From the NCBI GenBank assembly GCA_001179505.1, contig CDMY01000474.1:5581-69580 (forward strand): a stretch of DNA of 64,000 bases, written 5' to 3'. The stretch's first letter is position 1; every line of letters starts with the position of its first letter. This document shows positions 15,409-17,943 of this stretch, piece by piece. Source of the DNA: Vitrella brassicaformis CCMP3155 (lineage: Eukaryota; Protista; Chromerida). A program made the translations under genes and the position numbers. The notes beneath the pieces are model-generated. The model was given only the letters and a program-made list of their open reading frames with translations, did not search any database and was not told where the DNA came from.

Positions 15409-15664
15409 GATATGTCTGTGTGCGATGATGATAGATAAGGGTTATTCGGCCGAAGGACAGACGGCTGTGTGATGACGATACATAGATAATATGTGTCCCT
15501 CATGGGTACCATGCAACGCCTGCCGGTCAGCGGTCTATGGATCCTGACTGCACACTACTCTCACTGTACACACGCTTTCTCAAAGCCTCTGTCGCTTCCG
15601 TCCACTCATCATTCACCGTGAGCACTTAGTGCCTGTCTGCCTGGTTGGGTGGCCATCAATCATC

Positions 15665-16354
15665 TCATCTCCACCCCCTCTCAGCCTCCTGCAGCACATA
15701 CTCCGCCACAGCAGCAACATCCTCATCAGTCAACCTCGGACCAAAGGTACACTGCACACACCACACACACACACACACACATGCACGGACGGTGCAGACT
15801 CATATCAACGGCTGGCTCTCGTCCCTCACCCGTGATTTCGGGTTGCAGCTCTCGCCAAATCCGGGCATGTTCGCCACGCCATAGTAGGTCACCTGATAGA
15901 GCTTGTCGACGTCATAGATTTTGTTGCCGATGAGGTCTCCCTTCTTGAGTGTCTTGCCGGCACGAGCCGACGCTATCACATTGCCACCGCCAGCATGGCA
16001 CGCTGCACAGTTGATGTTGAAAACATCCTCACCCCGTGTTGCGCCAATGACCGGGTCGATGGGAAGGCTGGCGAGAGCAACGAGGGCAAAAGGCAGCAAC
16101 ACACTCCGCAGGAGGCTCTGCAAAGGCTGGGTAGCATCGGTTGCAGCGTCGTGTCGTGGCTCAGACGCCTTCAGCAACCCGCTGCCGAGAGATCTCCTGT
16201 CGCTGTGGGACAGGTGGGATGGTCGTTGCGCCGTCTGCTGCAGTCGTGTAAGCGAGGGAGTGAAGGCAGTGAAAGAATGAGTTGTTGAAGAGAAGACGAC
16301 AACTGCGACGACAAGTTGCGTCACCAGCTGGTGGAGACCTCTGAACAGCCGCAT
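15665..16354 (-). CDS. petJ: Cytochrome c6-family protein of the c6A type, nuclear-encoded, with a tripartite (signal + transit + thylakoid) presequence; 2 exons
   Basis: Heme motif CAACH and distal Met in NMPGFG. Intron 15829-15752 (GT..AG, phase 0) joins GESCNPKSR|CTFGPRLTDEDVAAVAEYVLQEAERGWR*; stop at 15665-15667. The presequence has a TAF motif and a second hydrophobic stretch ending VIGA. Confidence 0.92.
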
Positions 16355-16529
16355 CGTCCAGACGGATTCGTGACGGGATCTTCCTGCAGGCTTAGCTCGC
16401 AGCTTTCCTCCGTTTTTCCATTGCAGATGGACTCAGCACTTCTAGACGTGGACACAAATTCACAGAGTAGGTATGTCACATCGACATATCATCCAGTCTC
16501 GTGGTCTCGGCCGTTTGCTGCCTCACGTC

Positions 16530-17943
16530 CTACTTGGCTCTACCGAACTGCCCCAGCAGCTCAGCAAGCTTCTCATTGTCTAATCTCGGCAGCCCGCTGC
16601 GCGCCCCCTGGTGCTTCAACTTCTCGTGCGCAATGAGGCCACCCCACACCAGCACCCTCTCCACACACCATCCCCTCAGCAGCCCGAAGATGACACCGCC
16701 GATGAAGGCGTCCCCGGCCCCCGTCGTGTCAACGATCTCCGACTCGTCGATGGGCCACGCGCTGCAGTGCACCGCTGCATGACAGCCCTCGCCACTCAAT
16801 GCATCAACTGCTGGCGGCTCGTCGCACCAATCGACCAAAGCGATCTCGTCAGTGGTCACAGTGGCATACCGCAGCTTGACGGGCACGTGGGAGCGTAAGG
16901 GTGAAGGGCCATCGACATGGAGGGAGGGGTGAAAGGGGCAGGGCATGAGCATCACAGCCCCCCGCTCGCCGAGGGTGGAGCACACAAGCCGCCTCGTGGG
17001 GCACTTGGCAGACAGATGACGCATTCCGTGCAGGAAAGATGAGTCCACCGGCGCATTGGGGGAGGAGGAAGGGGAAGAAGACGGGGCGAACTGCTTGGGG
17101 TAGCGGCTGTTGGTGAACAGGACATCCGCGAGAGCGAGGAGCTCTGGTAGCCCTTCACGATCCTGAGCAACGAGCGAAGGGAGGCCAACCAATGAAATGG
17201 AGAGAACACCAGACCATCATCGTCTTTGCCCACCTTTTCTGCATCCAGTGAGATCGTCACGCCAGCCTCTTTGGCCAACTCAGCCAGTCGACAGGCGGCC
17301 GCTGGTTGCCTCGCATCTGAGTGTACCCAACGAATGCCCGCATCCCTCCGAAACATGTCGTCTGCTACATCATTCGCCCCCATCTCCTTCGGGCAGGGCG
17401 TGTGGATGCACGTGCGGGTCTTGGCAGCCTCATCGACGATCACATAAGTGAATGGCGAGGGGACGCCAGGATAGGTCAGGACCAGGCTTGTGTCGATACC
17501 GTCCTCACGCAGCTCATTGAGTATGGTCTGCCCGTTGCTGTCGTCTCCGACACACGTGATTATGCCGCACTTCACACCCAGCCGAGAGAGGGCCGTGCAT
17601 GTGTTGCCGGCGTTGCCGCCTCCCTCTATGCTGAGCGACTCTGTCCTGATCTTGTCGTCGGGCTCCGGATAAGCCGCTACACGGGCGAGAAAGTCGACTC
17701 CAGCAGCACCGACACAAAGAACCTTCATTGTCGGCACTGTGCGATGAGTCCCTCGCAACCGCAACTGAAGAAAGCGAACAGACAAGTGGCAGATCTGTGT
17801 GCTGGTATGTTGCTTCACTCACGCAGTACCGATCTTTCGTTCCGCCCAGCTGCATTCAGCACAAACGCCGCAGCGAAGTGTTCGCGGATTCCCCTGCTGA
17901 CGAAGAGAAGCACAAGAAGGCCTTGGAGCCGAGTGTTCAGCAT
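16530..17943 (-). CDS. PfkB/ribokinase-family carbohydrate kinase, probably plastid-targeted (3 exons)
   Basis: Signatures GGGNAGN and VDTTGAGDAFIGG. Intron 17233-17163 joins LDAEK|DREGL. An upstream exon MLNTRLQGLLVLLFVSRG...AAAFV...ERS is joined in phase 0 by intron 17829-17765 to LRLRGTHRTVPT-MKVLCVG. Confidence 0.9.

What the first reader, a model, noticed from the sequence alone, without database searches (positions are those of the whole stretch)
15665..16354. Cytochrome c6A-type protein (two-Cys loop insertion + Val at the redox-tuning site) in a red-lineage alga
Seen: the spliced product reads ...LYQVTYYGVANMPGFGESCNPKSR|CTFGPRL...GW. The second Cys appears only after removing the 78-nt intron, so the ORF track hides it. 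Known: the ~12-residue disulfide-bridged loop insertion and a Val in place of the c6 Gln define cytochrome c6A, a low-potential lumen protein of plants and green algae with unresolved function; c6A-like features have also been noted in peridinin dinoflagellates. Inference: a chromerid copy bears on whether this is shared myzozoan ancestry, horizontal transfer from green algae, or convergence.
Basis: partly seen in the sequence, partly recalled or inferred. Interest (0 to 1): 0.75.

Follow-up and report, generated by a model that had tools for sequence, protein, structure and literature searches.

The report
Chromerid cytochrome c6A-type gene
The alga Vitrella brassicaformis has an expressed two-exon nuclear gene for a cytochrome c6A-type protein, a kind so far described in green plants and algae, Euglena and (as a look-alike) dinoflagellates; this widens the known range of the family but does not settle where the gene came from.

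Summary
Observation confirmed. On the minus strand, exon 1 (16354-15830) and exon 2 (15751-15665) are joined by removing a 78-nt GT-AG intron. The product is 203 aa and identical to the public Vitrella brassicaformis model, which is named only 'cytochrome c-553'. Two transcript-like contigs lack exactly this intron.

The mature domain meets the published sequence definition of cytochrome c6A. It has CAACH and Met163, Val155 at the position of Arabidopsis Val52, and a 12-residue loop insertion with Cys170 and Cys176. It aligns without a gap through that loop to Arabidopsis c6A (2CE0, 98 bits; best canonical c6, 57 bits). A predicted structure matches 2CE0 at rmsd 0.9 Å.

Chromera velia has an orthologue. 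Two pelagophytes also carry the two-Cys loop. Other ochrophytes carry an 11-residue Cys-free insertion at the same site.

The loop motif (C-x-P-K/R-x-x-C-T-F-G) is shared with green c6A, so convergence is unlikely. The origin stays open: with the loop columns the chromerids join the green clade, and without them they do not. AU tests reject nothing.

Low potential, the disulfide and lumen location are inferred, not shown. No searched paper links c6A to chromerids. This is a new member of a known kind, of moderate interest.

The parts
15830..16354 (-). Exon 1: start codon to Arg175. It holds the presequence, the heme site, the tuning residue, the Met ligand and the first half of the loop insertion.
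   Evidence: Covered by transcript-like contigs.
15752..15829 (-). 78-nt phase-0 GT-AG intron between Arg175 and Cys176, with a (GT)n microsatellite just before the acceptor.
   Evidence: Sequence. Absent from contigs X1 record 2 and X2 record 7; partly present in contig X3 (kind not on record, taken as DNA). The public model P0001 uses the same splice.
15665..15751 (-). Exon 2: Cys176 to Arg203 plus TGA. It holds the second loop cysteine, TFGPRL and the C-terminal helix ending GW.
16277..16354 (-). Residues 1-26: a hydrophobic, signal-peptide-like N-terminus followed by Phe27 (...THS/FTAF), as in presequences for red-derived complex plastids (inferred).
   Evidence: The best 11-residue hydropathy window in the first 35 residues scores 2.8. 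No dedicated predictor was available.
16040..16114 (-). Residues 81-105: a second hydrophobic segment ending ...VIGA just before the mature domain. It is a candidate thylakoid-lumen targeting domain (inferred).
   Evidence: Hydropathy 2.7 in the 40 residues before the domain. Green c6A precursors show the same kind of segment.
15995..16009 (-). Heme-binding motif Cys116-Ala-Ala-Cys119-His120.
   Evidence: These columns are invariant in a 47-sequence alignment.
15890..15892 (-). Val155 codon (GTG), at the position of Arabidopsis c6A Val52 and canonical c6 Gln (the redox-tuning site).
   Evidence: Gapless alignment to 2CE0, and to the V52Q variant 2V07. Eight of 8 canonical c6 rows have Gln here; 81 of 83 two-Cys rows have V, L or I.
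15866..15868 (-). Met163 codon, the expected sixth heme ligand.
   Evidence: Invariant column M163.
15830..15850 (-). First part of the 12-residue loop insertion (Ser169-Arg175), with Cys170 at 15847..15845.
15737..15751 (-). Second part of the loop insertion (Cys176-Pro180), with Cys176 at 15751..15749.
15470..16384 (-). Span of the transcript-like contigs: at least 30 nt of 5' UTR and about 195 nt of 3' UTR.
   Evidence: table 8.

Best explanation
This is a nuclear gene of Vitrella brassicaformis for a cytochrome c6A-type protein. Shown: the gene is spliced as proposed, and spliced copies stand in transcript-like contigs. The product is a class-I monoheme c-type cytochrome of the c6 family. 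It has Val at the tuning position and a 12-residue insertion with two cysteines at the site, length and motif of the green-lineage c6A loop. Chromera velia has an orthologue. Inferred: the three-part presequence (signal-peptide-like segment, transit-like segment, second hydrophobic segment) takes it across the complex plastid envelope into the thylakoid lumen. Cys170 and Cys176 form the loop disulfide, as in Arabidopsis 2CE0. With Val instead of Gln beside the heme, the midpoint potential would be far below that of cytochrome f. The protein would then not carry electrons from b6f to photosystem I. It would instead act, like c6A in Chlamydomonas, in a side pathway of lumenal redox regulation that helps balance the photosystems under changing light. 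On origin, the loop is homologous to that of green c6A, not convergent. The gene was already in the common ancestor of the two chromerids. Whether it came by descent within red-derived plastid lineages or by an old transfer from the green lineage is not resolved.
For: Splice and expression. Family: Pfam Cytochrome_CBB3 and Cytochrom_C. By phmmer against the PDB, Arabidopsis c6A 2CE0 scores 2.2e-27 (98 bits, gapless through the loop), the best canonical c6 scores 1.8e-14 and c6C 4EIE scores 1.9e-10. The AlphaFold2 model (pLDDT 89) matches 2CE0, 2V07 and 2DGE at TM 0.88-0.90 and rmsd 0.9 Å; canonical c6 gives TM 0.8 or less. The NCBIfam PetJ equivalog scores 76 bits against a cut-off of 135. Val155 sits at the Val52 column. 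Loop motif: 73 of 83 non-redundant two-Cys relatives share C-x-P-K/R/Q-x-x-C-T-F/Y-G/A, and 81 of 83 have five residues between the cysteines. Chromera orthologue P0004; it is sister to Vitrella at 99/91 and 92/90. All two-Cys proteins form one clade at 97/80, apart from c6 at 100/93. Function of c6A and its +71 mV potential: PMC8358224 and bioRxiv 10.64898/2026.02.13.705717.
Against: No potential, disulfide, heme attachment or location was measured. Vitrella departs from the family consensus: G-V-A replaces the usual G-K-G before Met-Pro, and three extra residues follow the heme motif. Gln154 lies next to Val155, so a one-residue register shift would put Gln at the tuning site. The gapless alignment and the 0.9 Å model argue against that shift. 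The alignment has only 92 columns, and AU tests have little power: even a forced clade of chromerids with canonical c6 is not rejected (p = 0.149). Runs X1 and X2 are only guessed to be RNA.
Confidence: 0.85

Rival explanations
1. Origin by old gene transfer from the green lineage. Under this reading the chromerid gene is a green c6A, acquired by endosymbiotic or horizontal transfer before Vitrella and Chromera split.
For: With all 92 columns the chromerids fall inside a clade with the 38 rows I labelled green (100/91). The highest identity of the Vitrella domain is to rows in that clade (54-55%). The (I/V)-T-Y-Y/F-G stretch around the tuning site resembles streptophyte sequences.
Against: Once the 17 loop columns are removed, the 38 green rows form a clade without the chromerids (100/94), and the chromerids sit weakly among ochrophyte sequences. 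Green monophyly without chromerids is not rejected on the full alignment either (p = 0.441). Only a few of the 'green' rows carry an organism name. The loop intron lies two codons away from the intron found in the chlorophyte Micractinium.
Confidence: 0.35
2. Origin by descent within red-derived plastid lineages. Under this reading the loop insertion is older than the green lineage, or spread early. It is kept with its cysteines in chromerids and pelagophytes and without them in other ochrophytes.
For: Two pelagophytes, Chrysophaeum taylorii and Pelagophyceae sp. CCMP2097, carry the two-Cys loop and Ile at the tuning site. Fibrocapsa and Nannochloropsis carry an 11-residue Cys-free insertion at the same site; many unnamed rows of that group keep a P-K-G core. 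Without loop columns the chromerids lie among these sequences. A clade of chromerids with the other non-green two-Cys rows is not rejected (p = 0.289).
Against: Support for that placement is weak (34-82%). The full alignment favours the green side. No named red algal sequence was in the set. Slater et al. report c6B, not c6A, in red algae.
Confidence: 0.4
3. Convergence: an independent loop insertion into a chromerid c6B, as Slater et al. proposed for peridinin dinoflagellates.
For: That paper argues for an independent loop in dinoflagellates. The backbone outside the loop does not clearly group with green c6A.
Against: The insertion has the same site and the same length (12 residues) as in Arabidopsis c6A, with the same five-residue Cys spacing. 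Seven of its 12 residues are identical to the Arabidopsis loop, and the flanks (MPGFGE before, RL after) match as well.
Confidence: 0.05
4. It is simply the organism's working cytochrome c6 (PetJ), the electron donor to photosystem I, as the database name 'cytochrome c-553' suggests.
For: It belongs to the same fold and family. AU does not formally reject a forced clade with c6 (p = 0.149).
Against: It has Val, not the Gln found in all 8 canonical c6 rows. It has the 12-residue loop. It scores 76 bits against the 135-bit cut-off of the PetJ equivalog. Canonical c6 is split off at 100/93. c6A cannot replace plastocyanin or c6 in plants.
Confidence: 0.03

Closest known systems
Arabidopsis thaliana cytochrome c6A (PDB 2CE0, 2DGE; V52Q variant 2V07)
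   Same: About 45-48% identity over the whole mature domain, with no gap through the loop. It shares the CxxCH motif, the Met ligand, Val at position 52, the 12-residue loop with two cysteines five residues apart, and the TFGPRL flank. The predicted fold superposes at rmsd 0.9 Å.
   Different: Vitrella has a three-part presequence for a complex plastid, three extra residues after the heme motif, G-V-A instead of G-K-G before Met-Pro, and a phase-0 intron just before the second cysteine.
Chromera velia Cvel_10327 (P0004, UniProt A0A0G4I271)
   Same: Nearest relative in both trees. It has a two-Cys loop, a hydrophobic tuning residue (Ile) and a signal-peptide-like N-terminus.
   Different: Only about 51% identical in the domain. 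Its loop is more diverged (C-K-P-Q-R-M-C-T-Y-G-E-K). It keeps G-K-G and lacks the three-residue insertion. Its genomic locus was not available.
Pelagophyte two-Cys c6-like proteins (Chrysophaeum taylorii KAJ8608165.1; Pelagophyceae sp. CCMP2097 KAJ1459425.1)
   Same: Two-Cys loop with the same spacing and the C-x-P-K-x-x-C-T-F-G motif, Ile at the tuning site and a signal peptide.
   Different: The helix before Met-Pro is of another type (for example ...IIALGKNAMP). There is no intron in the loop: the Chrysophaeum gene has no intron at all. They fall outside the green-plus-chromerid clade in the full tree.
Peridinin dinoflagellate c6A-like proteins (S. microadriaticum OLP91854.1, A. carterae CF065358.1; Slater et al. 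2021)
   Same: Both come from alveolates with red-derived plastids, and both are reported to have a hydrophobic tuning residue and a two-Cys insertion.
   Different: The paper says their loop shares little beyond the two cysteines with green c6A, whereas the Vitrella loop matches the green motif closely. I could not retrieve these sequences by name, so no direct comparison was made.
Cyanobacterial cytochromes c6B and c6C (PDB 4KMG, 4EIE)
   Same: Same fold and a hydrophobic tuning residue. They are the presumed ancestors of c6A.
   Different: They have no loop insertion. They also match much more weakly (4EIE at 1.9e-10, against 2.2e-27 for c6A).
Canonical cytochrome c6 (PetJ)
   Same: Same fold, heme motif and Met ligand.
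   Different: Gln at the tuning site and no loop insertion. Vitrella scores below the PetJ equivalog cut-off.

Membership tests
cytochrome c6A | Class-I c-type cytochrome of the c6 family: CxxCH heme site and Met sixth ligand | tested here: met
   CAACH at residues 116-120 and Met163 are invariant alignment columns. Pfam hits; c6-family PDB hits.
cytochrome c6A | Hydrophobic residue (V, L or I) at the position of Arabidopsis residue 52 (definition in PMC8358224) | tested here: met
   Val155 aligns with Val52 of 2CE0 and with Gln of the V52Q variant 2V07.
cytochrome c6A | Loop insertion peptide of about 12 residues with two cysteines, relative to c6 | tested here: met
   The 12 residues Ser169-Pro180, with Cys170 and Cys176, align without a gap to the Arabidopsis loop. 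Length relative to c6C and c6 is shown.
cytochrome c6A | The two loop cysteines form a disulfide bridge | not testable with these tools
   Inferred only, from the 0.9 Å superposition of the model on 2CE0. Coordinates of the model could not be measured.
cytochrome c6A | Midpoint potential about 200-250 mV below c6 | not testable with these tools
   Inferred from Val155. Published values are +71 mV for c6A against +325 mV for c6.
cytochrome c6A | Thylakoid-lumen location | tested here: inconclusive
   The hydropathy pattern fits a signal peptide plus a lumen-targeting segment. No targeting predictor or experiment was available.
cytochrome c6A | Groups with known c6A in a tree | tested here: inconclusive
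   It lies inside the two-Cys clade (97/80) and, with loop columns, inside the green clade (100/91). Without loop columns it does not. AU tests reject none of the alternatives.
canonical cytochrome c6 (PetJ) | Gln at the tuning site, no loop insertion, and a score above the NCBIfam NF045930 cut-off | tested here: not met
   It has Val155 and a 12-residue insertion, and scores 76.1 bits against a cut-off of 135.
cytochrome c6B / c6C | Hydrophobic tuning residue but no loop insertion (definition in PMC8358224) | tested here: not met
   The loop insertion is present.

The most novel reading that the evidence does not exclude
The two-Cys loop insertion is not an invention of the green lineage with a separate look-alike in dinoflagellates. 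Under this reading one insertion arose once and is now found in green algae and plants, Euglena, chromerids and pelagophytes. The Cys-free 11-residue insertion of other ochrophytes would be a derivative of it. The published model of c6A evolution (c6A arising after the green lineage diverged, with two independent origins) would then need revision. The still poorly understood function of c6A would also be shared by red-plastid algae that dominate the oceans.
Probability: 0.4. Interest if true: 0.6.

Novelty: new member of a known kind. Interest (0 to 1): 0.45.

Why it matters
Cytochrome c6A is present in nearly all plants and green algae sampled. Its function is only now being uncovered: a 2026 preprint reports a growth advantage in fluctuating light and a role in photosystem balance in Chlamydomonas. 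The current evolutionary model places its origin inside the green lineage and treats the dinoflagellate look-alike as an independent invention (PMC8358224). That survey did not sample chromerids and lists no c6A among 80 ochrophytes. A c6A-type protein with a green-type loop in both chromerids, and in pelagophytes, extends the family into red-plastid algae. It also weakens the case for convergence. It gives new organisms in which to test whether the loop disulfide and the low potential serve lumenal redox regulation. The finding is incremental: the gene model was already public, under a generic name.

Tried and rejected
1. The word-index protein search found almost nothing. With exon 1 it returned only the query itself, and with the mature region only two relatives. 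I therefore ran the exhaustive representative search and then a profile word search to collect names and cyanobacterial references.

2. Organism names could be recovered for only about a dozen of the relatives. The label 'green' for 38 rows therefore rests on tree position, plus two named rows among them (Micractinium, Coleochaete) and rows with land-plant-like sequence; the named Haematococcus row was left out of the trees.

3. I tried the protein atlas to find the taxon of two MMETSP sequences that might be dinoflagellate (P0099, P0034). It gave no usable taxonomy.

4. The Slater et al. supplements give accession numbers for the dinoflagellate c6A-like proteins but no sequences. They were therefore not in my trees.

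5. The Chromera genomic locus is not on record, so intron positions in the two chromerids could not be compared.

6. AU tests turned out to be uninformative: p = 0.289, 0.446, 0.441 and 0.149. Even a clade with canonical c6 is not rejected. The classification therefore rests on discrete characters and similarity scores, not on topology tests.

7. I rejected a shared intron as evidence of green ancestry. The Vitrella intron lies between Arg175 and Cys176. The intron of the chlorophyte Micractinium lies two codons upstream.

8. I considered whether Gln154 rather than Val155 sits at the tuning site, because the local string Y-Q-V-T also occurs in canonical c6. I rejected this on the gapless alignment to 2CE0 and 2V07, and because other two-Cys relatives, several with land-plant-like sequence, also have Gln at the preceding position.

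Full report
**Observation.**

The minus strand of window 15665-16354 holds an ORF of 184 codons (16354..15800). It reads ...MPGFGESCNPKSR and then runs on into VRDESQPLI and a stop. Directly after the Arg codon at 15832-15830 comes GTGAGG. Seventy-eight bases further on, a (GT)n run ends in TGTGCAG at 15752.

From 15751 the same frame reads CTFGPRLTDEDVAAVAEYVLQEAERGWR and a stop at 15667-15665. Removing 15829..15752 (78 nt, phase 0) gives a 203-residue product. This product is letter for letter the public protein of Vitrella brassicaformis CCMP3155. NCBI calls it 'unnamed protein product' and UniRef calls it 'Cytochrome c-553'.

**Expression.**

Two contigs from runs that the tool guesses to be RNA cover the gene: X1 record 2 (810 nt) and X2 record 7 (821 nt). 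They lie on 15470/15497-15748 and on 15830-16364/16384. Exactly three letters sit between the two pieces. That number fits 15749-15751, which the tool had masked as part of the repeat.

The 78 bases 15752-15829 are thus missing from both contigs. Contig X3, whose kind is not on record and which I take for DNA from its long, intron-bearing contigs, runs from 15795 through the donor site into exon 1. The contigs end about 10-30 nt upstream of the ATG and about 170-195 nt downstream of the stop, as a transcript would. Their depth (37 and 131) is well above that of the flanking contigs, but contig depth is a poor measure of expression. I take the splice as confirmed. Two caveats apply: the run type is a guess, and the joint row itself was suppressed by the repeat mask.

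**What the protein is.**

- Pfam finds the class-I cytochrome c domains.
- Against all PDB sequences, the spliced mature domain matches Arabidopsis cytochrome c6A best: 2CE0 at 2.2e-27 and 98 bits, then 2DGE and the V52Q variant 2V07.
- The best canonical c6 reaches 1.8e-14 (57 bits), and c6C (4EIE) reaches 1.9e-10.
- The alignment to 2CE0 covers residues 5-99 of the 105-residue chain. Its single gap is three extra Vitrella residues after the heme motif; there is none in the loop.
- An AlphaFold2 model built on 51 aligned relatives (mean pLDDT 89) superposes on 2CE0, 2V07 and 2DGE at TM 0.88-0.90 and rmsd 0.9 Å. Canonical c6, c6C and c6B follow at TM 0.69-0.80.
- The NCBIfam equivalog for canonical c6 (PetJ) scores 76 bits against a cut-off of 135.

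**Test against the published definition.**

Slater et al. 2021 define c6A by two features: a hydrophobic residue at the equivalent of Arabidopsis position 52, and an insertion with a disulfide (the LIP) in the loop (PMC8358224). Val155 lies in the column of Val52. In the same alignment the V52Q crystal variant shows Gln at that column.

In my non-redundant set, all 8 canonical c6 rows have Gln there, and 81 of 83 two-Cys rows have V, L or I. Compared with c6C and c6, Vitrella has 12 extra residues between MPGFGE and RL. These are Ser169-Pro180, with Cys170 and Cys176.

Seven of these 12 residues are identical to the Arabidopsis loop, and both flanks match. Of the 83 two-Cys relatives, 73 share the motif C-x-P-K/R/Q-x-x-C-T-F/Y-G/A, and 81 have five residues between the cysteines. 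Both sequence criteria are met. The disulfide itself, the potential and the location were not tested.

One point needed care. The local string Y-Q-V-T also occurs in canonical c6, where the Gln is the tuning residue. In c6A this stretch is one residue longer before Met-Pro, so Gln154 falls at position 51 and Val155 at position 52. Other two-Cys relatives, several with land-plant-like sequence, also carry Gln at position 51, so this is not unusual.

**Presequence.**

The 105 or so residues before the mature domain have three parts:

- a strongly hydrophobic start (hydropathy 2.8), followed by ...THS/FTAF;
- a polar middle part;
- a second hydrophobic segment (hydropathy 2.7) ending ...VIGA just before the domain.

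This is the pattern expected for a lumenal protein of a complex, red-derived plastid. It remains an inference.

**Relatives.**

The exhaustive search gave 556 relatives at E ≤ 0.001, of which 140 are at E ≤ 1e-10.

- The nearest is Chromera velia Cvel_10327, at 51% identity. It has a two-Cys loop and Ile at the tuning site.
- Named two-Cys proteins also include Euglena gracilis, the green algae Micractinium, Haematococcus and Coleochaete, and rows with land-plant-like sequence.
- Unexpectedly, two pelagophytes are among them: Chrysophaeum taylorii and Pelagophyceae sp. CCMP2097.
- A further group includes Fibrocapsa and Nannochloropsis. It has an 11-residue insertion at the same site without cysteines, and many of its unnamed rows keep a P-K-G core.

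Slater et al. sampled no chromerids and list no c6A among 80 ochrophytes. No paper in the searched library mentions c6A together with Chromera, Vitrella or chromerids.

**Phylogeny.**

I built a careful maximum-likelihood tree of 83 rows and 92 columns, rooted on canonical c6. It shows:

- canonical c6 apart from the rest (100/93);
- all two-Cys proteins as one clade (97/80);
- Vitrella and Chromera as sisters (99/91);
- the chromerids inside a clade with the 38 rows I labelled green (100/91);
- the pelagophytes, Euglena and an unnamed group outside that clade.

When the 17 columns of the loop and its flanks are removed, the result changes. The 38 green rows form a clade without the chromerids (100/94). 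The chromerids, still sisters (92/90), sit with weak support among the Cys-free ochrophyte sequences.

The AU tests reject nothing:

| Forced clade | Alignment | p-AU |
|---|---|---|
| chromerids + other non-green two-Cys rows | full | 0.289 |
| chromerids + green | loop columns removed | 0.446 |
| green alone (chromerids outside) | full | 0.441 |
| chromerids + canonical c6 | full | 0.149 |

The protein is too short for topology tests to decide. Three points hold in both trees: the two chromerid genes are orthologues, they are not nested in any named green subgroup, and they are not canonical c6. Descent versus old transfer remains open.

**Introns.**

The Vitrella intron is phase 0 and lies between Arg175 and Cys176, directly before the second cysteine. 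In the chlorophyte Micractinium conductrix a phase-0 intron (L001 3515-3811) lies between C-A-P-R and G-A-C, two codons upstream. Several unnamed predicted proteins that read through an intron break at that same point.

The Chrysophaeum gene has no intron. The CCMP2097 gene has none in the loop. The positions differ, so the intron gives no evidence for a shared gene history.

**Mechanism.**

These steps are shown: a spliced, expressed gene; a c6A-type primary structure; and a model that fits the c6A crystal structure.

These steps are inferred from the family. Arabidopsis c6A has a midpoint potential of +71 mV against +325 mV for c6, largely because of residue 52. It cannot replace plastocyanin. 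In Chlamydomonas, loss of c6A shifts light-harvesting balance towards photosystem II, leaves the plastoquinone pool more reduced and slows growth in fluctuating light. The authors suspect a role in lumenal thiol-based regulation.

I therefore expect the Vitrella protein to be a low-potential lumenal cytochrome working beside the main electron chain, not in it. I put about 0.85 on the c6A-type identity and less on the specific role.

**Verdict.**

This is a new member of a known kind, under a generic name in the databases. Together with the pelagophyte and Cys-free ochrophyte sequences, it questions the view that the loop is a green-lineage invention.

Noticed in passing
L002:1501-1935 (Chrysophaeum taylorii, P0038); L003:1501-2039 (Pelagophyceae sp. 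CCMP2097, P0086): Two pelagophytes (ochrophytes with red-derived plastids) encode c6-family proteins with the two-Cys loop motif and Ile at the tuning site. They therefore meet the published sequence definition of c6A. The 2021 survey lists no c6A among 80 ochrophytes and sampled no pelagophyte.
   Followed up: partly
P0083, P0091, P0100, P0116, P0122 (Fibrocapsa), P0125 (Nannochloropsis) and about 20 more: A clade of low-potential-type c6 homologues (98/90 in the full tree) carries an 11-residue insertion without cysteines at exactly the c6A loop site; many rows, though not the two named ones, keep a P-K-G core. It may be a Cys-free derivative or forerunner of the c6A loop. Several members also end in a C-terminal extension ...C-D-E-Y-P-G-C.
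   Followed up: partly
L001:3515-3811 (Micractinium conductrix, P0051): This chlorophyte has a phase-0 intron inside the loop, between C-A-P-R and G-A-C. Several unnamed predicted proteins (P0072, P0075, P0088, P0111, P0143) look like read-through of an intron at the same point. The site lies two codons upstream of the Vitrella intron.
   Followed up: partly
window 15753-15783: A (GT)n microsatellite lies directly before the 3' splice site of the intron. Contigs X3 and X8 (kind not on record, taken as DNA) break there, and the read tool masks 15749-15794.
   Followed up: no
window 16530-17192 (minus strand): The ORF just upstream on the same strand has the C-terminal part of a pfkB-family carbohydrate kinase (Pfam PF00294, 1.8e-10). 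Low-depth transcript-like contigs cover it. The two genes are less than 200 nt apart.
   Followed up: partly
window 15872-15880 (residues 159-161) and about 15964-15972: Vitrella replaces the near-universal G-K-G before Met-Pro with G-V-A. It also has three extra residues (A-S-A) after the heme motif. Chromera shares neither change.
   Followed up: no
P0016 (Euglena gracilis) and P0062: The Euglena c6A, expected to be of green origin, falls outside the green clade in both trees, next to an unnamed metagenomic sequence. This is a reminder that this short protein places divergent sequences poorly.
   Followed up: no
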